Made by a program: the position numbers and the translations under genes | The notes under the pieces: generated by a model | What the model was told of the DNA's origin: nothing | The model's database searches: none | Seen by the model: only the letters and a program-made list of their open reading frames with translations | NCBI RefSeq assembly: GCF_021869535.1 | Contig: NW_026262593.1 | Location: forward strand, 15,624,001-15,688,000 | Reading direction: 5' to 3' | Source: Mytilus californianus | Taxonomy: Eukaryota | DNA length: 64,000 nt | Shown: in pieces, positions 5,995 through 59,940 of the stretch | Layout of the letters: each line of letters opens with the position of its first letter | Position numbering within the stretch: position 1 is the stretch's first letter

Positions 5995-6013
5995 CTGTCT
6001 GTATTAGCTGCAT
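5995..6013 (-). CDS. Exon 1 of tandem paralog C (rest of gene off the left edge)
   Basis: Identical 19-nt coding sequence and GTGAGA donor to gene A exon 1, inside a block homologous to gene A intron 1 and promoter. Confidence 0.55.
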
Positions 6014-6304
6014 TCTCAGATAAATGATTAATTAAATGCTACGAAATCATTCTATTTAAATACATGTTTAATTATATTCGTTAATTAAATAATTCATGAA
6101 GGATCAGTTACAATTTTTCGAAGATTTTTTTCAAAACTAATTCATCTTATGTTTCTACGCCCAACATCTGTCATTTTGTTTTGAAATGTCAAGTAAAATT
6201 ATTCCGGTGGACTTTGGAGCAAAGCAAATTTGCATGTTATGTGATAACGAGAAAAAGCTTTCAGTTATAAGACATCCTTACGCACTTGTTTAGCTTAAAA
6301 CTAC

Positions 6305-19201: not shown

Positions 19202-19368
19202 CTAAGTGGTTGATTTCTTTTGTTTAAATTTTCTATCCCTATTGCAGGTGGTACAGTCCAGTAACATTATTAATCCAATCACTGAGATTATAAAAGCTCC
19301 ACCAATTATTCCCATGACCTTAGATGATGTTCGTTCATCTGGAGCACTCGTCAGCGATCTCATGTACT
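19202..19368 (-). CDS. Gene A terminal exon (LTSAPDERTSSK + TM VMGIIGGAFIISVIGLIMLL + basic tail, TAG)
   Basis: Acceptor tttttgttag|, phase 1, hydrophobic 20-aa stretch followed by DCTTCNRDRKFKQKKSTT*. AATAAA on the minus strand at 19007-19012. Confidence 0.9.
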
Positions 19369-22300
19369 CTAACAAAAATTATATTAATGTAATTATAAGC
19401 AAAGAAATATTGTGTGCTTTTCATTTTCGTTTTGCATTACTATTTGTGTTTTCTGTTGTGTTACTTGTACTGTATGGTTCAAGGGATATTTTTAAAAGCA
19501 TCGACAGTGATATGTATACTTTGTTTTATAGCTTTCAAAAATTTTGTATGACTATAAAATAGATTTGTTAGATGAACTAAATTACAATAGACACATAAAT
19601 ACGGCATCTTAACGTCACCATCAGCGTTAAACTCCGCTATTGAAAAAAAAAACAATTGATCCTTTTGCAGGTTTATTTGCTGAAACTCGTTTTAAGCGTT
19701 CTTGACCTACATGTACTTAGATTCGTCCGACTCGGGTTGACTAGAGTTATAAAACCAGTGTTAATGCGCATGTGCGCAACCTTCCCGAATCGAAGTGAAA
19801 ACTTGACTCGAGTTCCTCAAAATGATAGATATAAATATAGCAGGAGTTGTTAATTTTCTTTTTATGGACGTCGACAATAAACTTTATGTTCAAATATGTA
19901 ACATAATTAAATAAAAAATTCTATCATTTAATCATTTCTAGTTATAACCAGGCTATTAAATTCATTTAAAAAAATTATCTTGCCCCGTCTTGCTCTTAGT
20001 AAACATGGTAAAAGGAATGTATTTTCGTAATACTTTCACATTTTTAATACTCTTAGCAACTCAAAATCCCAAAAGTTATATTGATAAACATCACCGACAG
20101 TATTTACACACGAAAAATAATTATTCAATGCCAAAAAACAACAACAAAATTTCACTTAACAGCCCCTACTTTGGATGTATTTTGTATCATACTCTTCTTT
20201 GCTTTTCTTGTTTGTAGCCATTTTGTAACTCTACTTAACCTACCTCAACACAGGGTTGATGTCGAGTAAACTCGGATAGGTTCAAAGGTCAAACCCCAAA
20301 AAGGGGTGTTGGAAAATACGCAAAGTACTGACATTGAACTATAGTAACGTTATAGCCATAACGCTGTAGTTAATGACTTTATTGTATAGATTTCAAAACT
20401 ATCACGACGATTAAACGTATTTTGCAATCATAACGTATTTATTGAGATTCTGCAACATTTAATGGTGCCGTGAACAGGGTATGAATTCAAAGCTGAAGTC
20501 AGTTCGTGCTGGACACAAAGGAACCGTCACGAAGCTACTGTCAAAATTCGATGAGTTGAAATCTAACATAAATACAGAAGTTGACGAAGTTAACGCTCTC
20601 GATGATGCGGTCTCACAGAAACAGAAAACATTGATTGCCTTTAATAGCAGACTCTTAGATCAAACGTCGGAGGATAATCTAGAACAGGAAATCACGGACT
20701 CATGTGAGAATATGTATGAACTAGTTTGCAAGGTTAGGCAGATTTATCAAGTCCTTAGAAACAAACACTAAAACGTTACACAATAATGTTGATCCTTCAA
20801 CAAACAGACTTAACGCAAACGTATATAATTTCACGCCCGAGGTCAGAGTTGATATGAACACTTGTGCAACAGATTCTATGAACGAGCAGTATTCAATTCA
20901 CGCACCTGCAGTACATACCCGCCCATCAGAGAATATTATATATCAATTCCCGTCAGAGATCGTCAAAAAGTAATTACCATAGGCTTTCTAAGTTAGACTT
21001 GCCCTATTTTAATGGAGATATACTCAAGTGGCAGACATATTGGGATTGTTTCGAGTCATCTATACATCTTAATGATACTTTAACGCCAATCCAAAAGAAA
21101 AATTATCTTAAAGCCCAGCTTTATGGAAGCGCCGCGCAATTAATAGAGGAATTCGCTAAGACTAATGCAAATTACGAAATCGCAGTCAACCTTCTTACAG
21201 ATCGTTACGGACAATTTAGTAAACTGATCCATGCTTACATGAAAGCACTCATGAACCTATCCGCACCGACAAATGATGTATACAGCTTGAGGTCTTACGG
21301 AGACAAACTAAAATCAGAGGATTAAAGTCACTTGGTCAAACACCAGTGATGTATATATCGCTTTTGGTCCTAGTTGTTTTTGACAAATTACCGAATGAAA
21401 TTAGGAAATCTATTGCGCGAGGACACGGGAGAGATAATTTGATCTTGGAAAAGCTACGCAAATCGATAACTAGAGAGGTTGATATACTCGAAGCAGGACA
21501 AAGAGTCACGGAATCAGACAGATTGCACACCACTGCATTTTTCATCGGTTCGAAACTAACTTCACGATCATACAAAAAGGGCAAATTAACAGACACACGA
21601 AAGAAGGTAAATACACGCATATGTATTATTTGTTCAGGTGAGCACTTTCCGACAAAGTGCACTGAAGTTACAGACTCAAACACAAGAAATCAAATTGTCA
21701 AACAGAAACAGTTATGTTTCAACTGTTTAGGGTCACACCAAGTGGCCGCATGAAAGTCTATAAAACGATGTAAATAGTGTAGCGGAATGCATCATACAAG
21801 CATATGTAAAGGAAAAAGGTCAATACAGACACGACACAGGAACCGAAAATATAGCAGACAGCTATCAACGTGGTTGAAACTACAGACAAAACTAGTGTAA
21901 TGTATGCATCATAACAAAGTCACGACATTCTCCTTAAAACAGCAATTGCACCAGTTATATATAACGACCAAGGAGTAGAATCTTACATCTTATTTGCTCT
22001 TCAACTGTTTCGCTTTTTATACATCCTCGGCTTTCAAATATTCGGCTTTGAGCGTTCTTGATGAAGGTAAATCCAGAAAAGCGCTTCGAACGCATGAAAT
22101 TTTTTAACGTGTTGTTTTCATATTTTATTTGACGAGGGAACACAGCGTTCTTTCATAACGCAAAAAATAGCGGATAAATTGGAAATAAAACCGACTCATT
22201 GTTCCACAAAATTCCGTCCCGATTCAGAGCAAGATTTTACAGACTACAAGGAGTTTGCCACACTTGAGATAACACAGTGGAAAACGTATTGAAATCGACC

Positions 22301-25300: not shown

Positions 25301-28300
25301 TAGGGGAATTATATGTACACCGTATTCACGAAAAGACATCGACGAATATACAATTCTCAAAGACAGAAACGACATCTCTAAACGCGCAGAACTACAAGCT
25401 TTCATAACTGACCAATTTTGGTCGCGATGGAAATCAGAATAGTTAACATCGCTACGTGAATACCACGCTCGAACAGGAGATAACGAACAGAAATGCAGAT
25501 ACAGTGGGAGACGTCGTACAAATCCATGAAGACAAGTATCCAAAACAAATGGACTATCGGAGTCAGTGATTCTTTAATAACTGTAAACGGTTGACTGAAT
25601 AGGGCAGCCGAAGTGAGATCAAAATGATGGTGCTTTTCTCGACCGATCGTTAAATTATATCCCCTGGAGATTTGTGACAATATTCATTCAGGAGACACAA
25701 GTGATACTCATTAACCAGGAACTAGTAACATACAAAGACGATTACCGGTTCATGAAGCTGCCGTGTGTGCCAGCAGAAACATTCATGAATGGACTAAGAG
25801 ATAGACTTTAATTGTAATCAGTCAAGGTTAAGTGAGTAACGTATATTATTTGAGATGGACATAAAATTTAAATTTCTTTTATCTATACTTCATTTTTTTT
25901 AAGTTTTCATGATTACATATTTCACTTTTGTCGGCCCCACAATGACGGTAAATACGCGAATTACTTACATTGAACTATGGTAACGTTTTAGCCATAACGC
26001 TGTAGTGAATGACCTTATTGTATAGATTTCATAGCTATCACGACTATTTAACGTATTTTGCCATCATAACGTATTTATTGAGATTCTACAACAGGGTGTT
26101 GGATTGAGTAAACTCGACAGACTCTACTAAACCGAGTTGGACGAATCGAAGTAGGCACTTGTGTTATGTAAGTAAATATATATATATATAAGATAAACTT
26201 TTAAAGTAGTCAGCACTTCTATATTGACATGAATTATTTTTGATAGGAGTTAGGGTATTTCGAAAAATTCAAAGTTTTGGAAACAGTTAATTTATTTATG
26301 ACAATATCAATGATAATTCTTGTCAACACAGAAGTGCTGACTACTTGGCTGGTAATAACGTCGGGAGAAAACTCCACCAATAGTGACATTGACCCAGTGG
26401 ATGTAAATAAACTCCTCATAGTTACCAGGATTGAAATTTTGTACGTTTCGTCTACAAAAGACTCAATATATAATTGGTAAATTCTTAAGTCAGGGATTTC
26501 GTGACTATAGATTGCTTGAAAACATTACTATATTCCTCCATAGTTGCTAAGATTTGAGATTTTGAAGATTGGCTATACCTGTAAAATTCTTTTTAAAAAA
26601 ACGGGATATAACATCCCAATGTTTACGGTAATTTTGTTTTTAAACGATTCATGTAAACGCATTGATCCTTTGAATAAACCTATTCTTAAAGGATGTCTAT
26701 TTACACCGTAGTAAGACATTTGATTATAACACTGGATGCAATGACTTACCGTGATTTCCCAGTGAAATAAAAACCGATAATTTCACATGTGAAATAAACT
26801 CTATAATATAGGTGTTGTCAAGACGATGTCGATGACGTTGCATCAAAGCAAATTGTGAATGCGTAAAAAAAAGATAAAGTTCCTTTCATTTTCTCCTTTA
26901 TTTCCATTTAAAAGTCCATTGCCAATGTAATAAAAAGAATAACTAATCACAGATTTCAAATATCATGAATTAATGTGTTGGTTGGTCACTCATTGAATAT
27001 TTTTCTATATTTGAATTCTTCGATAAGTTATTCTATAAATATTGTTTTAACCGGTACTTATAATGATTTTGTTTTGTTGAATTAAAAAGTTATTAAATAT
27101 TTATTGCTATACATTAATGAAAACATTAGGTCGATCTTATGTACTTAAATTTTTCCATGGCACAATATCATGCGATTCTCAAACTGTTTCTGGCATTTTT
27201 ACACTAAATCTGTAGGAAGTGTACTGATTCATACTTTAGTTAACCAAATGTTGTCAATATAACGGAATAATAAACACATGTCATACATGTGGAAGGTTTA
27301 GCTAGCTATAAAATCAGGTTCAATTCAATATTTTCTTCTGAAAACTACTATTCCAAGACAATAGTATGACATTTGTTAGCTTTTCGTTCCGCTTGTTGAT
27401 AAAGTCTAACGTTTGATTTTATCAGTTTTTATGGATTGAATTTCTCTTAGAGTTTTTTTTTTGTTAATACGTTTTTAGTCTGGAAGAACTCAATTTATTC
27501 ATTAGGTATTATTGGTTTTCAATTAGCTTTCAGTAACTATGGGTTATTTCAGGTCGGCTCTTTGTGTCTTTTGTCTTTATGTTAGTTCATTTTGTGATTC
27601 GTGTCGATTTGATGATTCATGCCATTTCCAACTGATTTTTACAGTGTGTTATTATGCTGTGCTGTTGCACCACTGTCCCAGGTAATGGAAGGGTTGATCG
27701 CTTACAGACATGGTTAACCCCGCCATATTCTATATGGGTCTGTCTCAAGTCAATTAACTGTGATTCAGTGGTTGTCGTTTGTTGCTGTCTGTCATGTTTG
27801 GGTTCGGTTGGTTTTTTTCATAAATCAGGTCGTTATTTTTTTTTTCATTTGGACTTTCATTTTGATAGTTGTCTCATTAGCAATAATACCATATCATTTA
27901 TTTCATAATAAGTTCAACTTTGTGCAACGATAGTTTAAGTGTAATATAAATTTTCATATGCAGATTTAGAGGAGATTGAGAGGGAAGCCAAAATTCGGAT
28001 TAAAACGTAAGTAGTCAAAATGTAACTGCAAAGTTATTTTATCTTTTCACGTGTTACTTTTTGTAAAAAAAATATTTCGTCAAAAATCCTATTATTTATG
28101 ATAGCTTTAAACTTTTCAAAGTTCTATTCTTCAACAAGGACTATTATCTACTGATGTACGTAAATTATTCCTTATACATATCTTACTTTGTGTTGATTTT
28201 TTTTCTACCGTTAGCTCCATTTTGATCCTGTTTATTTTGTTTTGCAGATCTTCGCTTCTCATTGTAGTAGATTGATCTTTATCTTTACTAGTTGATAATG

Positions 28301-31300
28301 TAGACTGTGATTGATCTTCAATTGGAATCGTTTTTGTTGATGATGTCTGTACAGAGTTAGTTATACATGGCGAATTCTCATGTACACAGTTCATGGCAAA
28401 TTGGTTAAAACATGTCGCTTTAATTGGAACTATAAAAGATATCAAAATAAGTCTATCATTGTAATAGCCTCATTGTTGTCGTTTATTGATTCATTTTACT
28501 TCATCCATAACATATATGGCAAGCAATTCATATTATTTGATTTGTTTCTAAAAAATAAAATGATTGAAAATTAATGCAAGCAACACATTTAATGTATTAA
28601 AAATCCACAGTGAAAGTTGACCTACCGAATTAGACTTATCACCGGGTTTGTACTTACTTGAGCAATACGACGGGTGCCACTTCTGGAGCAGAATCTGCAT
28701 ATCCTTCCTTAGGAGCACCTGAGATCATCCCCGGTTTTTGGTGAGGCTCATGTTGCTCAGTCTTTAGTTTTCTATGTTATGTTTTGTGTCATCTATTGCC
28801 ATGGAAAAAGAGAAATCAATCTGGTTTTTCTCATTGACATGAATGCCACACTTTAAGATACTTAAGTAAGTTTACTTGCTTTTATGTCCGATTTACGTCG
28901 GATAAAGCTACAATTGTCATTAAAACACTGTATTCCCTTGATCTTTCCTTCTTTTTTAATAGTTTAAAGTAAATAAATGACAGAAGGTTTACCGCCTTAA
29001 AACCTTATCAGCTAATATATCTTAAAACATTACGTAAATTCCTCTTTACGTAAATTTATCAGAAAGTTTTCTGAGCTTAGCCAGTGAAATAAGTAATAAC
29101 ATTAACGGTACCAACGTTTCTGCACCAAACGTACTCACTCTGTCGAAGCCGTCTAATTGGCAATCATACCACATCTCATTGTTTTTCACATGAAGCCATC
29201 TTAGGTAACTGCAGCACGAGGTATTAGTTGGTAACTGCCGCTCAAGATAAAAGTCAGGAATAACACTCATATACGGTTTCTTGAAGTCTCTTCGTCAATT
29301 TGATTACTATTACAAGCAACAGTTTTTATGAGACGCCAGTAAGTATTTAAAATCATCAGAAGATCTTGGTAAAGAAACAGTATTACTGAATTAGTGAGTC
29401 AACAAACCTGTACAGTTGTGATCAGTTCTTATCCTTCTTTAGAAAGGTAAGAATAAACATTTGTAAACTGTTCTAGAAAAGTTCTAACCTAGAATGGCCT
29501 GCCCTAGCAATGTTTTAACAGTAAGAATCGGTTCTAGTGTAGAACTCTTAGGATCTGTACCATGGTAGAACTATCCATATTTGTTATCGGCCAGAACTGT
29601 CAGAATATGATCTTGGGAAGAACATTTCTAAATGATGTGAATAAGAGCCGCTTTCTTGTCATCATTTAAAATTGTTCTAGTCGTCGATGAGGTCCGGGGC
29701 AGTTTATTAGATTTCCTATGTAGACATATAACCGATTTGTGTAGCGGTCCAAAAATGTTCTAGAAATAGAACTGCCATAATCAGTTCTCGAGAATAACTG
29801 TTCAAGGTAGAATTCATCAAAGCAGTTTAATGGTAGAAAATAAACTTATCATAGATACCATGCTTAACATATTTTACGCCAGACACGCGTTTCCAGAAAA
29901 GTCAGAATCTGTTCTATGGAAGAACAATTATATTTTTTCCGTGTTAAAACTGCCCGAAACTGTTCTAGAAAGTAAATGCCCAAAACGTTCTCAATCATGT
30001 CCAAGATGTACCCAGATGTTGATATCGTCGATATCGGCAATGTCGACACGATATCGAATCGATATCGATGTTCGCTTCAATAATCCATGACACACAAAGA
30101 CATACCAAGATGTCGATATCGTCGATATCGACAATGTCGACACGATATCGAATTGATATCGATTTTTGCTTAAGACATCCATGACCAACCCAGACATACC
30201 AGATGTCGATATGTCGGAGGCAGGGTAACAGTCGTTTTTATAAAGACTGATATGTCGGATGATACAATTGACATTGCGATGGAGTTTACAGAAAAACTTA
30301 ACTTATTTGGAGTAAAACTTGAGAAGTATAGGGATGTTACAGAGAATATGGAAAATATTTTGTGCCCTTCAAAGAAACAGAAAACAGTTTAATTTGATAG
30401 TTTTGATAGGTAAAGATCTAATAACAAACATTATCATTTGTACATTGAATTTGTATTTTTATTTTAATCACTATATAAGTTCAAAATATATGAATACTTG
30501 ACACGAAATAAAACTATTGGATTGAAAAACAGAATAATTATGTAAATATGTTACAAAATAGATTATTTAATCCATTATGAAAAAAAAATGTTTTAGAAAA
30601 GAAATAATACAAGTATTACTTTCTCTCACAATGTTTATTGAAAAAAAGTAAAGGACAGTTCTTTCAATTATAATAGAGATTACAACAGAAAAGAGCCATT
30701 AACCTGAGACACATCAATTATTAGTTGTAATGGCTTTGAACTAGCTTTCAGTAACTGCTACTACTTTCAGATCTGTACCTTGTTTCTTTTGTGTTTTTTA
30801 AGGTGTTTATATGCTTGGTATTGATTTGATGAGTTAGCTTTTTAATTGATCGTATATATGTCGTTCTGTAATACCACTGACCCCCCTTTTTTTTGGGAGG
30901 GGAGGGGGGGAAGGAGGGGTTGGCGCCTGCAAACACAATTTACCCCACCTTATTCTGTATATGCCTGTACAAAGTCAGGAGCCTATAATTTAGTGATTGT
31001 TGTTTGTTTATGTTTATGGTTTAAAACACAAATTAGGCCGTTTGTTTTCACGTTCGAATTATTTTACATTTGTTATTTCAGGGTATTTATAGTTTACTAT
31101 GCGGTATGGGTTTTGCTCAGTGTTAAAGGCCGTACGGTAACCTTTAATTTTGAACTTCTATGTCATTTGGTTTCAGGTAGAAAGTTGTTAATATAAACCA
31201 ATAACTGAAAATGACCAATACACTTAAACATGTAAAAAAGTAAACTGGTATAACATTTGTTCAAGTGTTTTAACTGATGATTTGTGCATTTTAGACATAT

Positions 31301-37300: not shown

Positions 37301-40300
37301 AATTTCGGCCTACAATTCGGAGTACATCTGATAAAAGATTTTTGACATTTTTGAAACACTCCAGTGTCTACTTAAGTCGATTCAATTAGTCTATGTTAAA
37401 GATTTTAACCAATTTGGTCATTAAAGACTCAAATTCAAGCTGAAATATGAAAAATCTATCAAATATGCCATAAAACGTCACTTTTCAGATGGCTTTTGTC
37501 TAAAATGGAAGTGGCTGCATTCGTGTTCAGTCTCAACATTTATATATGTTATGTATTATCATTAAATACAACATATATTTAAATATTAAGACTGAACACA
37601 AGTGCGGCCAATTCCATTTTAGACAAAATCCGTCTTAAAATTAACACAAATGCTAATATTGTGAAAATTGCAGTATTTTTGCATGAAAAAATGATGCTAG
37701 TACCTGATGCATGTCCATTGTATTGTCAAAAACAGCCCATATTCATGTAACACAAATATTTTACTTTCCAATAAATAGCTATAAGTGACATTTTTAACTA
37801 CTTTGTAAAATCGCTATATTTTGGGGCCAAAAAGGGGTCTTACCGGACCTACTCCTTTATATAAGACAATTTGTTTTCACCCGTAAAACAAATATTCACA
37901 AATGTACCAACAAATGATATACAAAATGCCTTTAAATTTGAAACAACTTACACTTTATAAATATTGCCATACTGTCAGCCACTGCATGGTGTATAGCTGA
38001 AAATAAAGATGATAATCTTGAGCATTTTTTTAATTTAACTATTTGTCTTAAATATATGCACCCATAGCATAGCTTAAATCAGCATATAATTTTCATCTGA
38101 ACTTGTCGTAATAGTTTCTGCAACTAGATACTAGTCATGTCCAATACTTTCTGTCTTCAATTTATCAAAATATTGCAATAATTGTTCATGTATTATAACT
38201 TAAGAAACAGAAATCGGAAACGATTTTATTGTAACTCTACTTGCAAAATTGTTCCTTTCCTTTTGGACTAACTAGGTTGTTTTATATGAAATCGTATTTC
38301 TTTTATACTAAAAGTAAAGGCGTATACCAGCTGTTTGCCTTACATAACGATAAAGACCTTTTTTAGTACATTGTATACTAGAAACTCCAATTCATTTAAA
38401 AAAAAAATACAATGTGTAACTTGTACCCTTTGGCACGTACATGATGTCGCATTGCACCATGGATATCATATCACTTGTCCTAATGACAGCACTAACCCCT
38501 TCGTTGCATCTGATCTCTGTTTAGATTCCGATTGTAATTACTCCAATGTATATGCATAGACTTATGATACTAAACTGTGGACATCGGCATACATGTACTA
38601 CTTTCATTTAAATTGTTTGGACTTGTCCAAAAAGTGGTCTCTAGTCCTCTTCAAATCAAGTAAAAAAATATTTTACTTAGTCTTTGTACGTTTAAAGTTT
38701 TTTTTTAATACAATTAAGAACAAACATGACTTTGGTTTATACTCCATGAATATGCTAGAAAAGTTAGATAACATTACCCTTCGACACATTGGAACTTGCA
38801 CTAAAAAGAATAAAAGGCTGTTCTGTGATATTTTCCTCATACTGACAGTTGCCTTCAGCATCTCCAACAAGTAACAAACCCTCGTCTGTCTCACATTTAT
38901 CTGATTTATCATTTCTTATGTAAAATCGTCTACTATAGTTGCCGGCATGACGATCAGCTTTCCCATGTATACTACAAGTGTATAAAAAGCTATTATATTA
39001 AATAAAATAAATGAATCTCCAATAACATTTCATAGAAAAAATATTTAATAGGCATTAGTTATGAATTAGAAAAAATAAGATTTTTTTTTTTTGTTTCAAT
39101 CATATATAAAATCGAAATAATAATATTTTGCTATTAGCTATCAGTTTGATTCAATTTCGTCAAAATATGCTAAAAATAAAGATCGATAATGTATTATTCG
39201 GCTTGCAAGTCAATAATTCAACCTCATTTGAATCTAAAATCATGCATTCTTCAATTAAACCTTTAGTGAAGATGGGCTGCGCATGTGTTCAACGTGTGGT
39301 TCATTTATTAAAAAGCCCACAAAAATCATTCTTAGATAAGTGAAAAGATGATGATTGGACGTGGTTGTCTGTCTATTTATATTTATATTTATGTTTATTT
39401 TGGGTTATATGAACGTTGGTATTCTTCGGAGGTCATTTCTATAGATAATTATATGGTGTCTAATCTAAAATACACACGAAATGCTGATACATTATAACGA
39501 CTTCATGTATTGTAATTTTTTTCTTTTTGGCCTTTTTATAATTTGAATATAAGTTTTAGTATATTATAAAACAAATATGAGAATTTATGTCAAATAGGTG
39601 AACATAAATTTGACAGTTAATGCCGTTGTAAGCCAACAGAATGTGTAGTAATTATGTTTAACCAGTACTCAAATATTTGATACAATTATTCCTATTCGTG
39701 CACTACATAAAATCAGATAAATGTGAGACAGACGAAGGTTTGTTACTTGTTGGAGATGCTGAAGGCAACTGTCAGTATGAGGAAAATAGCCCCCGATTTT
39801 CCCTGCGATTTAATGCCCCCACTTGTTGGTCAAATATCTAATTACGATTTGCGAAACAGTAATAATTATGTAGTACCAAGTTTTAGACTAGATATAACCA
39901 GAAAATCTTTTTTGCCATCTACTACTATTGAATGGAATAACCTAAACCCCGACATACGTACGTCCAAAAATATAAATATTTTTAAACGAAAGATGAAGTC
40001 TAAATTGATACAGCCACCCTCCTATTTCAGTTGTGGTGATAGAAATCTTAATATCATTCATACACGTTTGAGAAATATGTGCAGTTCTTTAAATTCAGAT
40101 TTACATCGTGTTAATATTAAACCCAGTCCAGCATGCAGCTGTGGCCACCCTGTTGAGGATAGTATTCACTATTTTTTTGAGTGCCCTTTTCACAACGAAG
40201 CAAGAGAAATATTGTTTTCAAAATTAGAAAGGCATGCTATATCCATTGAGCTTCTATTGGCTGGTGACGGTGACCTTTCTTTTCAGCAAAACAAAGAAAT

Positions 40301-43300
40301 TTTTGAGTCTGTACAAGCATATATCAGAATAACACAAAGATTTAAAACAATCAATTAACATTCTGAATTCCTACTTTCCAACTCTTCACTCCAGTCCAGT
40401 TTTATATATAATTCCATATTATATTATTTTTTTTGTATTTTTTTTGTTTTTTGTTTTTTGTATTTTGTTTTTGTATGCAATTTGTATTTATACATGCATT
40501 CCTACTATGTTTTTCGTCATTATCTAATGTACTTTGTGTTTATATTTATATAGGGAGAGGACGTCACTAATGTTGTTATAACTTGTGTCCAATCCCTTTT
40601 GCTACTTTTGCAAATAAAATATGTTTAAATTATAAAATAAACTTTAAAAACGGTAAAGTTATTTCGCTGAAAAAAATGAGCATAAGTTTTTTTTTCTGTA
40701 ACGACGACCATCGCAAGTCAGTTTAGAATAGGTTTGCCATGAATATCGAGATCAAAGTACCTGTATTACTGTCAGTTTTGCCATTTGATGTTTTTTGTTC
40801 GTTTTTAATTTTTTTTCCCCTCTAGTCAACAATACGAATTGATATTTTATTCTCATATTTTCATCAAATATTTTTTCAGTTTAGTCATACCTCATGTCGA
40901 GGAATAGGAGAAGCATTTTTAGTTTCTGAGTGACCGGCATACAGTAAGAGTGTAATAACAAATGGTAATATTAATTCACATTGCAGTTACTCTTGTATGA
41001 AGAAAAAGAGACGTTGGATACACGGAAGAGAGACAGTAGCAAACATAAATCGTCAAGTTGACTTCTAGAATACGGTTCCAAACAAAACTTTGGTCCACAA
41101 ACAAAATGTTGAAATAGTTTTCCTTTCTCTTTACAAAAGGAGCGTTAGCTGTCAAAATCATGTTAACCGATTTCAATCAAATTTTCATATACGATAAATA
41201 ATATACTAAAACGCATATCCAACTTTCAAAAAGTCCTAAAGAAACAGTTACCAATGCATTGATTCGTTAAAATGTATTAGCATTTATTGTGTATTTTATA
41301 CTAAAAACCATTTATTAACCACCTAGATTACCTCCGAAGAATGTAAGCGGTCATTTGACCCGATATAACATAACTATGATATAAATAGACAAGCCAGCAC
41401 GCGTAATCGTATAAAGACGATTTATCTCAAGGTCTGTTAAATTTCATGTAAAAGATTAAAAAAATATCTTTCATGTTTTTATGTTAATAGTATGTCTATT
41501 TAATAGCTGATTATGCCTATCACATACGTAACCCTTTTACAGCTAAGGGTCAAATTAAGATAGCATGGATATGGATTAAAATGAGTCGGATTATTAACTT
41601 GCAAGCCAATAATGCATCAGTGATGTTTCTTAGCTTATTTTGACATATTCGATCACACTGATTGCTAATATCGAAATATTAATTAAAAAAATCCTCTTTT
41701 TTATATTTTTATCGTGTCACCCTTTTAAATCGTAGATAATGTTCCTATAGGACGCAGTAATAAGAGGAGAAATCACAGAAAAATATTAAAACGTTGGGCG
41801 ACATTGAATAATAGAAACGTAATATACGGAATAGATTCTCCAATGATATTTTTAGTGAGCAAACTAGTGTAACTTTTAAGTTCTACATCGTATGATATCA
41901 TTAATAAATTATTAAACCAGAAGCTACTTGCACCGGTTGTAGCGGAAGTCTTTGCTAGATGTCGATCACAGTTAATCTGTTCATTGAAGAACACAGCTGT
42001 GGGGTAATATCAACACACTATAAAAATTATATCTGGCAAAATAATCTAACGGATATTGTCATAAATAGTATTGTTGCCTCTTATGTATGCAGTTACGTGG
42101 TTTAGTGTCTTCAATATTATAATTAGTTAACACAAAATAAAATGAATTTAACGGTGAAACCTTACCCAACAACAGAAAAGTGTGTAAAATCTATGTCTTT
42201 ATTCAGGTCACTGTAACTACTATTGATGAGTCGACTCTTATCAAACCAGCTTGTCTTGTTTGTTTCACTTCCATTAAACAAAAAAAATGCCTTTTCAATA
42301 CCGCTCACAAAAAGTGATATTCTAACCTGAAACAAGTTAATGATATATAGATTAAAAGATATTCTGCAACCACTTTAATTCACTGGTCGGTTATAGCAAA
42401 TTTGTTATCGTTATAAGTCCCAATTATCAGGTTGTCTGCAAATTGATATTGTAAAATATCAACTACGAGTCACAATATGAAACTTTTTGTCGAGTAAGCA
42501 CAGCGAAAACGGCTTCATATTGTGTCGAGCAGCTGATATTTTATAGAAATAGATTACCTTAGTTGTATTTGGCAAAACTATTAGAAATTTTTGGTCCTCA
42601 ATGCTCATCAACTTCGTACTTTATTTGGCCTTTTTAACATTTTTTTATTCGAGCGTCACTGATGAGTCTTTTGTAGACGAAAGGCTCGTCTGGCGCAAAT
42701 ATAAAATTTCAATCCTGGTATCTATGATGAGTTTATTTACAATATAAATATGCAGACAACCAGATAATCGAATTATCGGGTTGTATTTGCGTATTTTGCG
42801 TAATAAAAACAAGTGTTTTGTTTGTTTCACCAACAAACCGGAAGATCACGGGTTTCGGGTTATACCTATCAACGTCGGTTCGTTCATTATGACGTCCATG
42901 ATCAAAGTTATCAAGGCCGGTTCAATGTATTTGACGTCACAAAGCCGTGATATCTAATACCATGAAGAGCTGAGCAGAGTGATACAGACAGTGGGACGAC
43001 CGATAAATATATTTCCATATACTAGTATAGCAACAAGTAATATTTGAAATGTAGAAGATGGTTACAATGTTTAACACGAATATTTTCTTCGAAAGAATTT
43101 TAAATCATTGTAGAAACAAAAGTCGAAAGAAGTATCTTTGCCTGTGATATAATTCAATTCTTGATAATGCACATGTCAAACCAATATATTGCTAGACCAT
43201 ATACAGCAAATTATTAGCACAGAACTTGAAAAAGGACAATTCCGTGGTTTCTTTTTAAAAAAGATATTCGGTTTTGTAATTTAGTATTCCAATCCCATGT

Positions 43301-46300
43301 ACACATGTTAGAAACAAATTTAAAATAAATACCAAATCTATTTCTACATTGGACCAGTTGTTGACGATATCTGACTTGAAATGTTTCTTCACTTGGTATT
43401 TCGAACATTGTAATGACATGGCTTCTTTGTCATTCACATTTAATGAATCGTTAGACATGAACAAATCGTAAGCACTACCATTTCCTGTAAAGGAATATAA
43501 CAATAGTTTAAATGATGACAGAAAGACCACATTTTGAGAAAAAAAATCTTTGTGTTTCTTTTATGGTGAAATTTCGTAAGGAAATGAAGGAAACATCACT
43601 TGATATATATTTCTAAAGGCATATGCACATAATTTGATGTTATTCTATATATAGATGTTTTGTATGTGGATTCCCAAAGTTTTTGTTGAGTTTATCTGCT
43701 GGAATATTGCGCAGGCAACTAGTGTGTCGGTACATTTTGACTGAACATTTTCGATTACACGCTAATTAATTGTGCTATAGGCAAGGCTGTAACTTCCTAT
43801 GACATTGCTTTTGGTGTACTGTTTATGCTTTTTATATCATGCATTTCAGTTTATTTTGTAAATTTGGCTTTTATATTTTTTGACCATGAGCTTATCTGAT
43901 GAAGATTATTTCATGTATATTAAGCTTTGAGATCATACGTTAAATTCCCACGTCTATGTAGAACGGGCTAATGGTTGACTGGTCCGTCCATCAAGGAAAT
44001 ACGGTTTATGTACTTAAAGAAATAAAAGTTTACAAATTATTTCAAAATGAAGTATATAAAGTTTGTAGTGTTTATACTAAATTTTCTGAATATAAACTGC
44101 CAACGCCATGGCAAAAAAAGAAAAAAAGAACAAACAACAAACAACAGTATTCAAAACAAAGTATAAATAACTGAAGACTGAGCAACACGAACCCCGCCAA
44201 AAGTCGGGGTGATTTCAGGAGTTCCGGAGGGGTAAGTAGATCCTATTCCACATGTGGCACACGTTATGTTACTCATATAAGTACAAACCCGTAGGTCACA
44301 TTCGAGGAAAAGAGGACGGGTTTGGGGTTACGACAATTCGAAATTATTCGTTCTTCATCGATGTCTGTGAAACAAATATTCCATAACGGTCAACCAACTT
44401 GTGATGGCGTTCGTAAAAATTTTAATTAGATGATTACAACTTCGCTACTTGGAACTCTTGGTTTAATAGCTCCCTTGTGAGGAGCAACCCTCTATAAGGA
44501 TATCATAATAGGAAATGCAAGCTCTATAATATCGAATCAACTGGGAGATATACACTCCATATGCTAGCGTTGTTGAAGTGTTACTATATAGAAATTGAAA
44601 GTTCACAATTGGGACGCTAAAATCATCTTTTCAAAGTTTTGTTGTCAACCAACTCCCATGGTCAATTTCTAGATAAAAGTTGACCTTAACAATTGGTGAG
44701 AAAAAACTGTTTTTCTTTAACTTGCATAATAAAACGAAATGTTTGGCGAAACTTTTTGAATACCTGAAAAGAAAGAAAAATCACTTGATATATGTCTTTC
44801 TTTAAGGAATTGTTTGTTTCTGGTATCATAGAAATGAATGATAAATATAGATTACCTCCAGTTGCTATTTTGTAGACAAGAGCCCAGCATTCCTCTTCAC
44901 CTCGAGACATACAAATATGCAGATTCACAGCTGCATAAATTATCAAAACTGTAAATTATTATTATTTACATTAATTAATTAATAAACTTTATGCAAACTT
45001 CTAAATTCTACCTGATTATAAAATGACACACCACATCGATAACGTTTGTAATGTTTACAATGCCTAATAAGAAATTATTTTATAGATAATTCATTGTATC
45101 TTATATACCTATATGGAGTTATTTGCTTTCAGAACGATAAGGTCATTCTTTGAAGAAACAATCCGGACGATACCAAGTTTGAATGAAAAGTGATTCTATG
45201 CATAAAATAATTACCTGTGTTAGGTCATTATTTACCCCGATTTTAATGCAAACTAATCTGTTAAAACATCATTTGATGTTGCCAAATAGGAGTTTTCCAT
45301 ACAACTTTCCATTTTGAATATTCCTAAAAGGTTTAAGGCAGAAACAAACCTTTACTCCATATATCAGTTTGAAATACTAGTACCAGAGAAATGTCTATAA
45401 TTAAAATATGGTCGGTCTTTCATTTAAATAAACCTGACACCCCTCGGTGTGTTATACGACAAGAAAAACCTGAAAATATGCATTATCTGTAACATATACT
45501 TTAGTGATAATGTAGAAGCATGATCACAAGGTACAATCAATAATTTGTCTGTAAAAATGGGTAGAAATAGTTTGTCTTGTATATTACAGGACTCTGCAAC
45601 ACTGTGCAATTCATAGGAGATTAAAATTATTCATGTATGTTAAGCCATCTACTTCTAGGTATCCGTGTATATAATGCCATGAATATGAAGTTTTAATTAT
45701 TTCAATATAATGTTTAAACATCTGCATCTTGTCTTTGGTTATTCTCGTGTCCACGAAGCCGGTAAAATCAAGCTATAAATAAGAATATCAATTGTACTAT
45801 TATTAAAATAAAATTTACAATTATACCGAAATTGGAAACGGTAAACGTTCCCTATCGAATCTGAACATTTCCAAGTATACAAAAGATTCATTCAACAGTG
45901 GATGGGAAGTAGAAAATGAAAGCAGAAGCATAGAAGAATACAATATATTTCTTTAATTGAGATTTAAAGTAAGAATATAATTCGAACAGAGCAGTTAAGA
46001 CAATAATTAATAAACAAAACAAGGACAATAGTATCAAAACTGTTGTAACACTCCCAAACGTGTCCATCCCCCAAACGTGTCCATCCCCCCAAACGTGTCC
46101 GATGCCCCCAAACATGTCTATTTCCCCCAAACGTGTCCTAAAAAGTTGATATCGCCCAAACGTGTCTGATTTCATAACCCCTAAACGTGTCCGATGCTTG
46201 TTATTCGCCAAAACGTGTCCACTTTAAAACGCCTAAACGTCTAAAAACTTTAAGCTCTATTATGTTCTCATTGACGTCAATAACATAGGAAAATGTCGGG

Positions 46301-52300: not shown

Positions 52301-52558
52301 GTTTTTATTTCTGTAATATATATATACCGTGTACCAAAAAAAAAGCAATATTGCTCAATAAAATTAAAACCATTACGAATTTGTATACACAACAGAGCAT
52401 TAAGCTATATTGTGTAAGACATATATATAGCGCAATGTTACATAAAAAAATGATTCATTTTAAGACAATTAGTTCAACATTAATTATATTTTTATTTTTT
52501 AATGAAAACAATTAGGTAAGCGATATGTTATGTTCTCACCTGTCTGTATTAGCTGCAT
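19202..52558 (-). CDS. Gene A: 8-exon gene for a 351-aa predicted type I membrane glycoprotein (unnamed ~200-aa ectodomain, S/T-rich stalk, predicted coiled segment, single TM, basic tail)
   Basis: Exons 52540-52558, 44856-44930, 43333-43484, 42166-42326, 38778-38971, 37952-37996, 28187-28429, 19202-19368. All introns are GT..AG and phases join 1,1,0,2,1,1,1 into one stop-free 1056-nt frame: MQLIQTAVNLHICMSRGEEECWALVYKIATGGNGSAYDLF...HFKSDIVNNWSNVEIDLVRISLF...SWFDKSRLINSSYSDL...RRFYIRNDKSDKCETDEGLLLVGD...ADSMAIFIK...ELTVEKKSTQKYMRSLTSAPDERTSSKVMGIIGGAFIISVIGLIMLLD...KSTT*. Eight N-X-S/T sequons lie in the ectodomain. Confidence 0.85.
20307..20457 (+). repeat. 5' LTR
   Basis: About 16 mismatches out of 151 against the 3' LTR (roughly 10% divergence). 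Confidence 0.95.
20463..20473 (+). promoter_or_regulatory. Primer-binding site, tRNA-His type
   Basis: TGGTGCCGTGA 5 nt after the 5' LTR, complementary to the tRNA-His 3' end. Confidence 0.75.
21997..22131 (+). mobile_element. 135-bp hammerhead-bearing insertion in the BEL protease
   Basis: 7-bp direct repeat ttatttg (21990-21996, 22125-22131); removal restores ILFDEGTQ. Confidence 0.8.
22052..22093 (+). ncRNA. Variant minimal type I hammerhead motif
   Basis: gcgttc-TTGATGA-aggtaaatcca-GAAA-agcgct-TC-gaacgc: perfect 6-bp stem I, palindromic stem III, C3U core change, non-canonical stem II base. Confidence 0.6.
23282..24305 (+). mobile_element. 5'-truncated PLE (RT C-terminus + 3' tail) inserted in the BEL RT
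   Basis: Colinear with 34920-35890; removing 23182-24305 restores MKGDL-YVDNIL. Confidence 0.85.
25943..26093 (+). repeat. 3' LTR
   Basis: Same length, colinear with the 5' LTR. Confidence 0.95.
26335..26470 (-). repeat. Fragment of the 42535-42745 family with a partly deleted hammerhead
   Basis: Minus strand tgagtcttttgtagacgaaacg..aaaatttcaatcctgg. Confidence 0.6.
27480..27900 (+). repeat. Degraded PLE 3'-tail copy
   Basis: catggttaaccccgcc core and ttgtctcattagcaataatacc end. Confidence 0.6.
28187..28429 (-). CDS. Gene A exon 7 (Cys-containing segment, S/T-rich stalk, EDLQNKINRIKMELTVEKKSTQ)
   Basis: Acceptor tcttttatag|, donor |gtaaga, 243 nt, phase 1-1; inside ORF 28131-28445. Confidence 0.9.
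28615..28800 (+). repeat. 3' end of a second PLE family
   Basis: gacctaccgaattagact..ggagcacctgagatc; also at 44165-44630 (-), 59300-59590 and 63151-63365 (-). Confidence 0.7.
29997..31870. mobile_element. Probable non-autonomous TIR element with CGATATCG-rich subterminal arrays
   Basis: 10-bp TIR ATGTCCAAGA / TCTTGGACAT; 94-bp units x2.2 at the left end, ~105-bp units at the right; nested PLE tail at 30715-31190; no clean TSD. Confidence 0.6.
32900..33370 (+). mobile_element. Old PLE RT fragment, continuing at about 35900-36330
   Basis: QQTIGIP..NCVPLLAYLFL; degenerate NIPAAIAYG.FIS. Confidence 0.6.
33400..35890 (+). mobile_element. Penelope-like retroelement, degraded RT + 3' tail (possibly Naiad/Chlamys clade)
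   Basis: KGPKYR, ADKTANN, FDFSTLYT, VGIPM, YRYLDD, YDKKDD..FPIVNFP, SYGVYISQFVRY; multiple stops and frameshifts. Clade assignment needs a phylogeny. Confidence 0.85.
37279..37856. mobile_element. Kolobok-like non-autonomous element
   Basis: TIR AGGAGWAGGTCCGRTAAG; flanks tcaa / ttat (degenerate TTAA). Confidence 0.65.
37952..37996 (-). CDS. Gene A exon 6 (AIHHAVADSMAIFIK)
   Basis: Acceptor ctttattttcag|, donor |gtaagt, 45 nt, phase 1-1. Confidence 0.85.
38778..38971 (-). CDS. Gene A exon 5 (IHGK...RRFYIRNDKSDKCETDEGLLLVGD...QPFILFSASSNVSK)
   Basis: Acceptor cacttgtag|, donor |gtaatg, 194 nt, phase 2-1. Confidence 0.9.
39710..39788 (+). repeat. 79-bp inverted copy of gene A exon 5 sequence (38829-38907)
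   Basis: 78/79 identity to the reverse complement; abuts the LINE 5' end. Confidence 0.95.
39789..40630 (+). mobile_element. 5'-truncated CR1-like LINE (ORF2 C-terminus + 3' UTR), antisense in gene A intron 4
   Basis: DLMPP..NYDLRN..KSFLPSTTIEWNNL..HTRLR..CSCGHPVEDSIHYFFECP; AATAAA near the end. Confidence 0.85.
42166..42326 (-). CDS. Gene A exon 4 (VRISLF...SWFDKSRLINSSYSDL...HFSVVG)
   Basis: Acceptor cttgtttcag|, donor |gtaagg, 161 nt, phase 0-2. Confidence 0.9.
42653..42696 (+). ncRNA. Minimal type I hammerhead motif, stem III mutated (within repeat 42535-42745)
   Basis: gcgtca-CTGATGA-gtc ttttgta gac-GAAA-ggctc-GTC-tggcgc; the palindromic CGCGCG is disrupted. Confidence 0.6.
43333..43484 (-). 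CDS. Gene A exon 3 (GNGSAYDLF...KHFKSDIVNNWSNVEIDL)
   Basis: Acceptor ttcctttacag|, donor |gtattt, 152 nt, phase 1-0; inside ORF 43255-43530. Confidence 0.9.
44165..44630 (-). mobile_element. PLE 3' fragment
   Basis: Reverse complement of the 59100-59590 type sequence. Confidence 0.75.
44856..44930 (-). CDS. Gene A exon 2 (AVNLHICMSRGEEECWALVYKIATG)
   Basis: Acceptor ttatgcag|, donor |gtaatc, 75 nt, phase 1-1. A paralogous exon of identical length lies at 59615-59689. Confidence 0.85.
46044..47681. mobile_element. 1.6-kb non-autonomous TIR element, TGT..ACA ends, AAACGTGTCC subterminal repeats
   Basis: TIR TGTAACACTC..AAACGTGTCCATCCCCC; about 8 motifs at the left, about 4 inverted at the right; absent at the paralogous site near 650; TSD ambiguous. 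Confidence 0.85.
47875..49260 (+). mobile_element. Paralogous copy of the same LINE relic
   Basis: ORF 48625-49158 with ILSSVYVPP..LAGDLNSRT..NYGNLLLDIC..VDYFL (APE motifs); colinear with 836-2260. Confidence 0.8.
49540..49797 (-). mobile_element. tRNA-head SINE, uninterrupted paralog
   Basis: Same head, plus body ccgctaagcacaaggcgttaaggagtaaaagcaaagactgg. Confidence 0.75.
52540..52558 (-). CDS. Gene A exon 1, coding part (MQLIQT + phase 1)
   Basis: ATG CAG CTA ATA CAG ACA G|GTGAGA. The ATG, length and donor are conserved in three copies and the phase matches exon 2. Intron 1 is 7.6 kb, so this is the least certain exon. Confidence 0.65.
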
Positions 52559-59590: not shown

Positions 59591-59940
59591 TCACAGTTTT
59601 GCTGTTTTATACAGCAGTGAACCTGCGTATTCGTATGTCTCGTAGTGACGAGGAATTCCGGCCTCTTATCCTCAAAATAGTAACTAGAGGTAACATGTTT
59701 TTATACATTTATACATTTTCTTATCATACTGGTTTCTTAGTATGATAATAGAATGGGTTAATGCCTGATAGCAAAAAAAACGATGGATATCGTTTTTTAT
59801 AAAGTATGATTATGTGTATGTCCTGGTTTATATTATATGCCTGTCAATAAATAAACGTAATATTGTGAAACATTTCACGTCTTTGTGAATTCTTTACATT
59901 ATGTCTTCACTTGACTCGTTTAAACACGATGATTTCAAGC

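What the first reader, a model, noticed from the sequence alone, without database searches (positions are those of the whole stretch)
19202..52558. Intact 8-exon gene for an uncharacterised type I membrane glycoprotein hidden in TE debris
Seen: eight canonical exons splice into one open 351-aa frame although more than 95% of the 33-kb span is intron. Seen: a ~200-aa ectodomain with W.LV..., HFKS...W, WF...SS..DL, RRFYI...C..D.G and AD.M.IF motifs and 8 sequons, then an S/T stalk, an ELTVEKK..LTSAPDERTSS juxtamembrane segment, a TM and a basic tail. From recall, this architecture resembles a family of unannotated mollusc proteins; I cannot name the domain. Inference: a cell-surface receptor or lectin-like protein of an expanding family. 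The N-terminus is only a weak signal peptide.
Basis: partly seen in the sequence, partly recalled or inferred. Interest (0 to 1): 0.72.

Follow-up and report, generated by a model that had tools for sequence, protein, structure and literature searches.

The report
Mussel membrane protein, fibrinogen-like head
This is a real, intact and transcribed California mussel gene, already listed by NCBI as an "uncharacterized protein", for a cell-surface glycoprotein whose outer domain belongs to a large unnamed invertebrate family that looks distantly fibrinogen/intelectin-like, so it is a lead rather than a hidden new kind of gene.

Summary
The minus-strand 8-exon gene exists.

One boundary is most likely wrong. 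Exon 2 probably starts at 44948, not 44930. That gives 357 aa, which is letter-for-letter NCBI's [quoted passage not shown] and has a proper signal peptide. The gene is therefore not hidden or unannotated.

Support for the gene:
- Two intact tandem paralogs have the same exons and phases, and similarity is confined to the exons.
- Domain dN/dS is 0.33-0.41.
- Exon 1 and its promoter are conserved.
- Stranded RNA reads lie on exons 3-5, with the exon 3-4 junction found in two studies.

The roughly 200-aa ectodomain has no Pfam, NCBIfam or PDB sequence match. It recurs in at least 48 places in this genome. It also occurs, alone or repeated, in scallop, snail, echinoderm and amphioxus proteins alongside Sushi, EGF, TSP1, ZP or adhesion-GPCR modules.

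Two confident AlphaFold models have intelectins, fibrinogen-related domains and TLDc domains as their only top structural neighbours, and weakly (Z 4.4-6.4). A profile comparison with mussel fibrinogen domains finds nothing.

Best reading: a membrane-tethered recognition or adhesion module on a mucin-like stalk, from an expanded family. Its function is untested. Interest is moderate.

The parts
52540..52558 (-). Exon 1, coding part: ATG plus 16 nt, phase-1 donor GTGAGAAC. By homology the 5'UTR and promoter extend to about 52790.
   Evidence: The ATG, the 19 nt, the donor and about 250 nt upstream are conserved at the matching place in paralogs A and B and in two extra copies. Transcript contigs of the paralog-A type carry the homologous 5'UTR contiguous with exon 1.
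44856..44948 (-). Exon 2 (93 nt): hydrophobic core and cleavage region of the signal peptide, and the start of the domain (C-W-x-L-V-Y-K).
   Evidence: The acceptor at 44950-49 is conserved in A and B. The product with this acceptor is identical to P0022. Low stranded RNA depth lies over the exon. The junction itself was not read.
43333..43484 (-). Exon 3 (152 nt), domain part with the H-F-K-S motif
   Evidence: Conserved in A and B. Stranded RNA depth is 3.3 against 0 in the neighbouring intron bins. The joint 43333|42326 appears in one X4 contig and one X8 read.
42166..42326 (-). Exon 4 (161 nt), domain core (F-N-G, W-F, S-S-Y-S-D-L)
   Evidence: 65-67% identical in A and B, and at least 48 related places in the genome.
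38778..38971 (-). Exon 5 (194 nt), domain part with R-R-F-Y-I and the conserved Cys pair
   Evidence: 56-59% identical in A and B. The exon-5 profile found 21 library representatives. Three RNA reads join the exon-4 donor (42166) to the inverted exon-5 copy, and all 7 reads over position 39736 carry the exon allele.
37952..37996 (-). Exon 6 (45 nt), last strand of the domain (A-D-S-M-A-I-F)
   Evidence: Conserved in A and B with the same phases.
28187..28429 (-). Exon 7 (243 nt): Cys-containing linker, S/T-rich stalk and conserved juxtamembrane segment
   Evidence: The stalk length varies between paralogs (138, 243 and 588 nt) while both ends are conserved. All 26 sampled words of this exon are held by four small RNA-sized contig sets, X1-X4.
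19202..19368 (-). Exon 8 (164 nt plus TAG): K-Y-x-R / S-A-P-D motif, TM helix and basic tail
   Evidence: 69-76% identical in A and B. At least 46 related places in the genome. Hydropathy peak at residues 320-342.
39710..39788 (+). 79-nt inverted copy of part of exon 5, lying inside intron 4. It is not part of the mRNA.
   Evidence: 99% complementary to 38829-38907, with a single mismatch at 39736. It abuts a LINE-type fragment whose other genomic copies start at 39789.

Best explanation
The locus is the Mytilus californianus gene that NCBI lists as LOC127719654. It has eight exons on the minus strand and encodes 357 aa.

Shown here: the gene is intact, its exons are conserved against two intact tandem paralogs, it evolves under moderate purifying selection, and it is transcribed and spliced from the minus strand.

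Read from the sequence, the protein has:
- a cleavable signal peptide (about residues 1-21);
- a roughly 200-aa N-glycosylated globular domain (22-221);
- a short Cys-containing linker;
- an S/T-rich, presumably O-glycosylated stalk whose length varies among paralogs;
- a conserved juxtamembrane segment with a K-Y-(K/R/M)-R motif;
- one TM helix and a 15-residue basic tail with no recognisable signalling motif.

Inferred: the globular domain belongs to a widespread, unnamed extracellular domain family of marine invertebrates. Its predicted fold is nearest to the B and P subdomains of fibrinogen-related domains and to intelectins, and it lacks their N-terminal A subdomain.

Most likely mechanism (inference): the protein holds this domain away from the membrane on a mucin-like stalk, where it binds an extracellular ligand. 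A glycan or other surface pattern is the first guess, by analogy with ficolins, FREPs, FIBCD1 and intelectins. It would then act as a tethered recognition or adhesion molecule, and might be released by cleavage at the dibasic juxtamembrane site. The short tail suggests that any signalling needs a partner.
For: Gene structure:
- The frame and splice sites were rebuilt from the sequence.
- The 357-aa model is identical to P0022, 'uncharacterized protein LOC127719654 [Mytilus californianus]', on a contig of the same length as C13.
- Paralogs A (472 aa, identical to P0024) and B (323 aa) have the same 8 exons and phases, and similarity is limited to the exons.
- Exon 1 and the promoter are conserved.

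Selection: dN/dS is 0.33-0.41 in the domain and 0.35-0.49 in the TM part.

Transcription:
- The joint 43333|42326 is seen in a contig of run X4 and in a raw RNA read of X8.
- Three X8 reads link the exon-4 donor to exon-5 sequence.
- The first mate lies on the + strand over the exons, so the RNA is on the minus strand, and neighbouring intron bins have zero depth.
- Exon 7 is held whole by four RNA-sized contig sets.
- Logan transcript contigs of the paralog-A type match A's exons 1-6 block by block.

Domain family:
- The exon-5 profile hit 21 representatives. These are proteins of scallop, Pomacea, a starfish, crinoids and amphioxus carrying 1-4 copies beside Sushi, EGF, TSP1, FN3, ZP or adhesion-GPCR parts.

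Fold:
- The mussel model has pLDDT 83 and pTM 0.85; a second model from the starfish member has pLDDT 79.
- Foldseek's top 30-50 PDB rows are nearly all fibrinogen-related domains or intelectins; the best is Angptl3, E 0.012, probability 0.84.
- VIA-align gives intelectin-1 Z 6.1-6.4 over 160-163 residues, XEEL 6.2 and fibrinogen-related domains 4.4-5.6. Scores then drop to 3.3-3.9.
- In the ESM Atlas the nearest cluster has TM 0.83 and is auto-named 'Fibrinogen C-terminal domain-containing protein'. A PF00147-bearing bacterial cluster has TM 0.58.
- UniRef gives family member P0013 the same fibrinogen name.
Against: - There is no sequence-level link to fibrinogen-related domains. Pfam PF00147 does not match any member even at E 10. 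hhalign of the 16-sequence domain profile against five mussel fibrinogen domains gives probability 0.2%. A PDB profile search and phmmer searches find nothing. NCBIfam finds nothing.
- All structural scores are in the range the tool itself calls 'middling' (Z below 8, Foldseek TM about 0.3). The cytosolic TLDc domains score as high as fibrinogen domains (Z 5.0-5.6).
- No Ca2+ or ligand site could be mapped.
- This gene and its M. coruscus ortholog have lost the family's nearly invariant Trp of the D-x-G-W-L motif.
- The exon 1-2, 2-3, 5-6, 6-7 and 7-8 junctions of this gene were not read in RNA here.
- Expression is low (depth about 2-3 at 6% sampling), and the tissue is unknown.
Confidence: 0.6

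Rival explanations
1. The ectodomain is an independent fold family that only resembles fibrinogen, intelectin and TLDc sandwiches by convergence. It would work as a protein-protein adhesion or matrix module rather than a lectin, as its partners in other phyla (Sushi, EGF, TSP1, ZP, PAN/Apple, adhesion GPCR) suggest.
For: There is no profile or HMM signal to fibrinogen domains. TLDc ties with fibrinogen domains in Z. The best Z is only 6.4, where the tool warns that chance matches are common. Relatives have multi-domain matrix-type architectures.
Against: Two independent models and two aligners put fibrinogen-related domains and intelectins, and almost nothing else extracellular, at the top of 350,000 and 48,000 chains. 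The Atlas TM is 0.58 to PF00147-bearing proteins. Automatic fibrinogen names are given to relatives that have no other region able to carry such a domain.
Confidence: 0.3
2. The main working form is soluble. The ectodomain would be released by proprotein-convertase-type cleavage at the conserved K-Y-(K/R/M)-R site about 20 residues before the TM, or made without a TM by alternative 3' exons. It would then act as a humoral factor.
For: The basic motif is conserved in own, A, B and more distant members. Transcript contigs of the paralog-A type leave exon 6 for alternative exons and stop right after the domain. NCBI lists a TM-less isoform X2 of paralog A's gene, LOC127719653 (P0027).
Against: In this gene the P2 position is Met, not a basic residue. 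The TM and tail are under purifying selection (dN/dS 0.35-0.49). No alternative 3' exon was seen for this gene. Cleavage is untested.
Confidence: 0.2
3. The reader's literal 351-aa model, with exon 2 starting at 44930, is the main product.
For: The site TTTATGCAG|CT at 44931-30 is a good acceptor in the same phase. The depth split over the two bins covering exon 2 does not exclude it.
Against: Only the upstream acceptor is conserved in both paralogs; A has no AG at the downstream site. The NCBI models for M. californianus, the M. coruscus and M. edulis models and the Logan transcripts all read M-Q-L-I-Q-T-V-L. The short form lacks a usable signal peptide.
Confidence: 0.1
4. The gene is a decaying or functionless paralog that merely still has an open frame.
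For: A nearly invariant Trp has been lost. Neighbouring copies are decayed: paralog D, and an inverted fragment of exons 1-2. The introns are full of TEs and RNA depth is low.
Against: The open frame runs through 8 exons. dN/dS is well below 1. The M. coruscus ortholog is 85% identical and shares the same Trp loss, so the change is old and tolerated. Spliced, stranded transcripts exist.
Confidence: 0.05

Closest known systems
Fibrinogen-related domain lectins (ficolins, mollusc FREPs, tachylectin 5A, FIBCD1, angiopoietin-like proteins)
   Same: An extracellular, disulfide-containing globular domain of about 200 aa. The predicted fold aligns with the B and P subdomains (for example fibrinogen gamma 186-387; Z 4.4-5.6). 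Like FREPs in molluscs, the family is strongly expanded. Like FIBCD1, the domain is membrane-tethered.
   Different: There is no PF00147 match and no profile-profile signal. The A subdomain is absent, because the domain starts right after the signal peptide. No Asp-rich Ca2+ loop is recognisable. The protein has type I topology with a mucin-like stalk, whereas FIBCD1 is type II with a coiled coil. There is no collagen or coiled-coil oligomerisation region.
Intelectins / X-type lectins (human intelectin-1, XEEL, lamprey LSVL)
   Same: These are the best structural neighbours of the mussel model (Z 5.8-6.4, 160-163 aligned residues). They are themselves very divergent fibrinogen-like domains that bind microbial glycans.
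   Different: Identity is 6-9% and rmsd 4.4-4.9 A. Intelectins are about 80 residues longer, soluble and oligomeric. Their Ca2+-coordinated diol-binding site could not be mapped here.
TLDc domains (Oxr1, NCOA7, TBC1D24, mEAK7)
   Same: Similar Z scores (5.0-5.6) over 120-130 residues in both models.
   Different: TLDc domains are cytosolic V-ATPase-binding domains without disulfides or glycosylation. They align over fewer residues. There is no Pfam TLDc match. The extracellular context here argues against common function.
Mucin-like type I membrane glycoproteins with an N-terminal binding domain on an S/T stalk
   Same: Signal peptide, globular head, variable S/T-rich stalk encoded by one exon, single TM and short basic tail. 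Stalk length varies between paralogs through repeat expansion (138 to 588 nt).
   Different: This is a shared architecture only, with no implied homology. The head domain here is of a different, unnamed family.

Membership tests
Fibrinogen-related domain (Pfam PF00147 / PROSITE PS51406) | Significant match to the family HMM or profile | tested here: not met
   PF00147 was not reported for the exons, for 10 full-length relatives or for 16 domain copies, even at E 10. hhalign against five mussel FReDs gave probability 0.2%. The PROSITE profile itself could not be run. Only the automatic names of relatives hint at a match.
Fibrinogen-related domain (Pfam PF00147 / PROSITE PS51406) | Three-subdomain fold (A, B, P), with the central sheet and the P-subdomain pocket | tested here: inconclusive
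   Both AF2 models align to the B and P region of many FReDs (Z 4.4-5.6, 120-155 residues, rmsd about 4-5 A; Foldseek E 0.012-0.6, TM 0.3-0.4). FReDs, together with intelectins and TLDc domains, are the only families above the noise, but all lie below the level the tool regards as safe.
Fibrinogen-related domain (Pfam PF00147 / PROSITE PS51406) | N-terminal A subdomain with its disulfide, before the G-G-W-T motif | tested here: not met
   The domain starts 5 residues after the predicted signal-peptide cleavage site. The models align from fibrinogen gamma residue 186 onwards.
Fibrinogen-related domain (Pfam PF00147 / PROSITE PS51406) | Ca2+-binding Asp-rich loop and acetyl-group pocket in the P subdomain | not testable with these tools
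   No residue-level structural alignment is returned. No D-x-D-x-D-type loop is evident in alignment A2.
Intelectin / X-type lectin | Intelectin fold with Ca2+-coordinated ligand site | tested here: inconclusive
   Top VIA-align rows are 4wmq Z 6.1-6.4, 5zc0 6.2 and 7e1e 5.8 for the mussel model, and 5.2 for the starfish model. There is no sequence match. The ligand residues were not mapped.
TLDc domain | Pfam TLDc match and cytosolic context | tested here: not met
   No Pfam match. The domain follows a signal peptide, carries 9 sequons and conserved Cys residues, and sits outside the TM.
Type I single-pass membrane glycoprotein | N-terminal signal peptide, one TM helix near the C-terminus, positive-inside tail, N-x-S/T sequons in the ectodomain | tested here: met
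   The hydrophobic N-terminus is present once the exon-2 acceptor is corrected. The hydropathy peak is 2.6 at residues 320-342. The tail is basic. All 9 sequons lie before residue 204. SignalP and DeepTMHMM were not available, so this rests on hydropathy and inspection.
The unnamed invertebrate domain family itself (W-x-L-V-F-K ... R-R-F-Y-I ... C-x-x-D-x-G-W-L ... A-D-x-x-A-I) | Full-length match to the family profile and conservation of the invariant columns | tested here: met
   A local HMM covers residues 22-221 end to end, and relatives match at E 1e-15 to 1e-50. In the 16-sequence alignment 7 columns are invariant. This gene keeps all of them, but lacks the nearly invariant Trp of G-W-L.

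The most novel reading that the evidence does not exclude
The 200-aa head may be an ancient, still unnamed metazoan extracellular domain family. It is seen here in molluscs, echinoderms and cephalochordates, and in cnidarians by Atlas taxa. It would be a stripped-down sister of the fibrinogen/intelectin fold, without the A subdomain or the Ca2+ loop. Mussels would have expanded it into dozens of stalked, membrane-tethered receptors, forming an unrecognised branch of their innate recognition repertoire with its own ligand chemistry.
Probability: 0.25. Interest if true: 0.6.

Novelty: new variant of a known kind. Interest (0 to 1): 0.36.

Why it matters
Bivalves rely on expanded families of germline-encoded recognition proteins such as FREPs, C1q-domain proteins and lectins. 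A further family of dozens of genes that standard domain libraries cannot see would be missing from every census of mussel immune and adhesion genes.

The same domain, unnamed, sits in large matrix and receptor proteins of scallops, snails, echinoderms and amphioxus. Defining it by a profile, a structure and a ligand would annotate many 'uncharacterized' proteins at once.

For this particular gene the practical result is smaller. It is a correctly annotated NCBI gene of unknown function, and the first-stage model needs an 18-nt correction.

Tried and rejected
- Pfam on single exons found nothing.
- A word search with exon 5 alone found no candidate, because hits must be of similar length.
- A word search with the domain profile returned only six proteins: five Mytilus and one scallop.
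- PDB sequence searches with the profile and with three distant members gave chance-level rows only.
- NCBIfam found nothing.
- hhalign against mussel FReDs, in global and local mode, gave no signal.
- I considered that exon 5 might be TE-derived, because 79 nt of it recur next to a LINE fragment. I rejected this: other copies of that element start exactly after the 79 nt, and both paralogs carry the exon.
- I considered that exon 1 might be a chance ATG. I rejected this: it is conserved, with its donor and promoter, in A and B and in two extra copies.
- An exact look-up of P0022 in the contig collection gave no record, because records of the window's own genome may be left out.
- A paper search for the accession numbers, and one for a TLDc-fibrinogen fold link, found nothing useful.
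- An Rfam search of the highly covered intron stretch gave only a sub-threshold miRNA-family row. The depth is explained by a high-copy repeat.
Full report
**How the model was handled.** Database searches with the window's own sequence were made exon by exon, by reference. Whole-protein steps used database entries that those searches returned (P0003, P0022 and others). The joined translation was computed only inside local scripts from window.fa. There it served to check the frame, to compare with flanking DNA fetched from the same genome, and to test identity with P0022. The N run at 2339-2508 was not touched.

**1. The observation.** Reading the sequence around them gives eight exons with AG acceptors, pyrimidine tracts and GT donors: 52558-52540, 44930-44856, 43484-43333, 42326-42166, 38971-38778, 37996-37952, 28429-28187 and 19368-19202. 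Joined, they give 1053 nt, or 351 codons plus TAG, with no internal stop. Coding sequence is about 3% of the span.

The introns do hold transposon remains. Intron 7 has a broken BEL/Pao element (DUF1759 and Peptidase_A17 pieces). Intron 4 has a zf-RVT LINE-type fragment with many 90-98% identical copies elsewhere. Intron 3 has a roughly 198-bp repeat with thousands of copies.

**2. Is it a gene?**

*Paralogs.* An own-genome search with exon 5 found two relatives on the same contig and strand. I fetched 140 kb around them. Both have all eight exons, in the same order and phases, and similarity is confined to the exons. Both give intact frames: paralog A is 472 aa and B is 323 aa. The length difference lies almost wholly in the S/T-rich stalk exon (588, 243 and 138 nt). 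Nei-Gojobori dN/dS between the three is 0.33-0.41 in the domain and 0.35-0.49 in the juxtamembrane, TM and tail part, with dS about 0.4-0.6.

*Exon 1.* Exon 1 looked weak, having only 19 coding bases. It is nevertheless conserved, with its GTGAGAAC donor and about 250 nt of upstream sequence, at the matching place in A and B.

*RNA.* Four small, RNA-sized contig sets (X1-X4, study P1) hold every sampled word of exon 7. A 2026 stranded RNA-seq run (X8, study P3) was also offered.

Laid on 39100-45099, X8 covers exon 3 (depth 3.3) and exon 4 (2.4) with the first mate on the + strand. That orientation means the RNA is on the minus strand. Depth is zero in the adjacent intron bins, and there is faint cover on exon 2. 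The joint 43333|42326 (exon 3 to exon 4, GT..AG on the minus strand) appears in a 169-nt X4 contig and in one X8 read, so it is seen in two studies.

Three X8 reads join 42166, the last base of exon 4, to 39710 on the opposite strand. That position is the start of a 79-nt inverted copy of exon 5 inside intron 4. The single difference between copy and exon is at 39736, and all 7 reads there carry the exon's base. These reads are therefore exon 4-exon 5 mRNA reads caught on the copy. That last step is my inference, because the tool does not print the 64 letters that would lie between the two aligned parts.

The remaining joints of this gene (1-2, 2-3, 5-6, 6-7, 7-8) were not read.

**3. The correction.** In the window that acceptor is AG 44950-49, so exon 2 starts at 44948 in the same phase, and the product has 357 aa.

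The exon-5 profile search led to full-length database proteins, and a word search with one of them returned P0022, 'uncharacterized protein LOC127719654 [Mytilus californianus]'. P0022 has 357 aa and lies on a contig of 74,791,930 bases, the length of C13. It is identical to my corrected model, and P0024 is identical to my paralog A model.

The M. coruscus ortholog (P0003, 85% identical) and an M. edulis relative (P0025) have the same exon 1-exon 2 reading. So do two Logan transcript contigs of the paralog-A type, whose blocks match A's exons 1-6 base for base at the boundaries.

With the six extra residues the N-terminus has a 12-residue hydrophobic core and a small-residue cleavage region. 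The 'weak signal peptide' was thus an artefact of the acceptor choice. The gene is annotated, not hidden.

**4. What the protein is.**
- Residues 1-21: signal peptide.
- 22-221: globular domain carrying all 9 sequons.
- 222-245: linker with three Cys.
- About 246-283: S/T-rich stalk.
- About 284-318: conserved juxtamembrane segment ending in K-Y-M-R-S-L-T-S-A-P-D. The paralogs have K or R in place of M.
- About 320-342: TM helix.
- Then a basic tail.

Pfam, NCBIfam and PDB sequence searches find nothing for the domain.

The domain is far from private to this gene:
- The exon-4 type occurs in at least 48 places in the genome. About 17 of them lie on C13 between 14.8 and 15.75 Mb.
- The exon-5 profile retrieved proteins of Pecten, Mizuhopecten, Pomacea, a starfish, two crinoids and amphioxus.
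- In these proteins a local HMM finds 1-4 full copies next to Sushi, EGF, TSP1, FN3, ZP or adhesion-GPCR parts.
- Atlas neighbours add cnidarian single-domain clusters and mollusc PAN/Apple clusters at TM 0.81-0.84.
- A 16-sequence alignment (A2) has 7 invariant columns, among them the second Cys of the conserved pair. The first Cys is nearly invariant.

**5. The fold.** AlphaFold2 on A2 gave pLDDT 83 and pTM 0.85. A second model with the starfish member as target gave pLDDT 79.

- Foldseek against the PDB finds no row below E 0.001. Even so, the top 30-50 rows in both runs are almost all fibrinogen-related domains and intelectins; the best is Angptl3 at E 0.012, probability 0.84.
- VIA-align over 48,161 representatives gives, for both models, one group at the top and then a gap. 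That group is intelectin-1 (Z 6.1 and 5.2), TLDc domains (5.0-5.6) and fibrinogen-related domains (4.4-5.5). The next row is at 3.3 and 3.9 respectively.
- The second look adds XEEL (6.2) and a lamprey intelectin-type lectin (5.8).
- The models align to fibrinogen gamma 186-387, which is the B and P subdomains. The A subdomain has no counterpart.
- A PF00147-bearing bacterial cluster matches at TM 0.58.
- UniRef and the Atlas give relatives the automatic name 'Fibrinogen C-terminal domain-containing protein'.

Against this, hhalign between A2 and five FReDs taken from this same genome shows nothing. All Z values are in the range the tool flags as possibly a common arrangement.

I therefore file the domain as fibrinogen/intelectin-like in predicted fold, at about 60-65%, and not as a demonstrated member of that superfamily.

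**6. Mechanism.**

*Shown:* an intact, constrained, spliced and transcribed gene for a protein with the layout above.

*Inferred from layout:* a type I surface glycoprotein holding its head on a stalk of variable length.

*Inferred by analogy:*
- The head binds an extracellular ligand, with a glycan or surface pattern as the first guess.
- The short tail implies tethering or co-receptor use rather than direct signalling.
- The conserved basic motif before the TM, together with TM-less transcripts of the sister gene, suggests that soluble forms exist.

This gene and its M. coruscus ortholog have replaced the family's nearly invariant Trp in D-x-G-W-L. This may mark a shift in function.

**7. 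Novelty and score.** The gene is annotated but uncharacterised, and no paper in the library mentions it or the relatives searched for. The domain family has no name in the libraries searched. Its likely kinship with fibrinogen/intelectin domains and its expansion in a bivalve fit a well-known theme. I rate it a new variant of a known kind, with interest about 0.36. It would be higher if the family proves to be a distinct ancient domain with its own ligand chemistry.

Noticed in passing
window 39710-39788 (+), with 38829-38907: A 79-nt inverted copy of the middle of exon 5 sits in intron 4, directly against the 5' end of a zf-RVT LINE-type fragment. Other genomic copies of that element start at 39789, so the 79 nt were probably picked up locally when the element inserted. 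There is one mismatch (39736), and RNA reads there carry the exon allele. Whether the inverted copy affects splicing was not tested.
   Followed up: partly
window 53291-53764 (+) and 59593-59706 (+): An inverted partial duplicate of the promoter and exon 1 lies head-to-head about 1 kb from the real exon 1, with its ATG, 19 nt and donor kept. It is followed by a degenerate exon-2-like piece that has lost the conserved Trp. No further exons follow.
   Followed up: partly
window 5995-6240 (-), continuing left of the window to C13:15616057-15621103: A third promoter-plus-exon-1 copy, with coding bases identical to the real exon 1, is the first exon of a decayed paralog. That paralog has a stop in exon 3 and frameshifts in exons 4 and 8. 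Exons 5-7 were not found.
   Followed up: yes
window about 42545-42743 and 44300-44500: Intron stretches reach RNA contig depths in the hundreds to thousands. The first is a roughly 198-bp repeat with over 3,000 first-look candidates at 92-96% identity, partly in tandem arrays elsewhere. The depth therefore comes from other copies, not from this gene. The second stretch was not examined.
   Followed up: partly
G000 C165:50.19-51.28 Mb and other places: The exon-8 type (S-A-P-D motif, TM and basic tail) matches at least 46 places. Some clusters have no exon-4-type neighbour, so the TM cassette may be shared with other mussel membrane-protein families.
   Followed up: no
L038 and L039 (Logan contigs of SRR13891806/7) against C13:15704939-15705207 and 15701710-15701805: Transcripts of the paralog-A type leave exon 6 for two alternative exons and stop right after the domain, predicting a secreted form without stalk or TM. 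NCBI also lists a TM-less isoform X2 (P0027).
   Followed up: partly
P0001 (M. galloprovincialis) and P0023 (M. edulis): These database models fuse the tail of one family member to the head of the next. They are tandem paralogs mis-joined by gene prediction.
   Followed up: no
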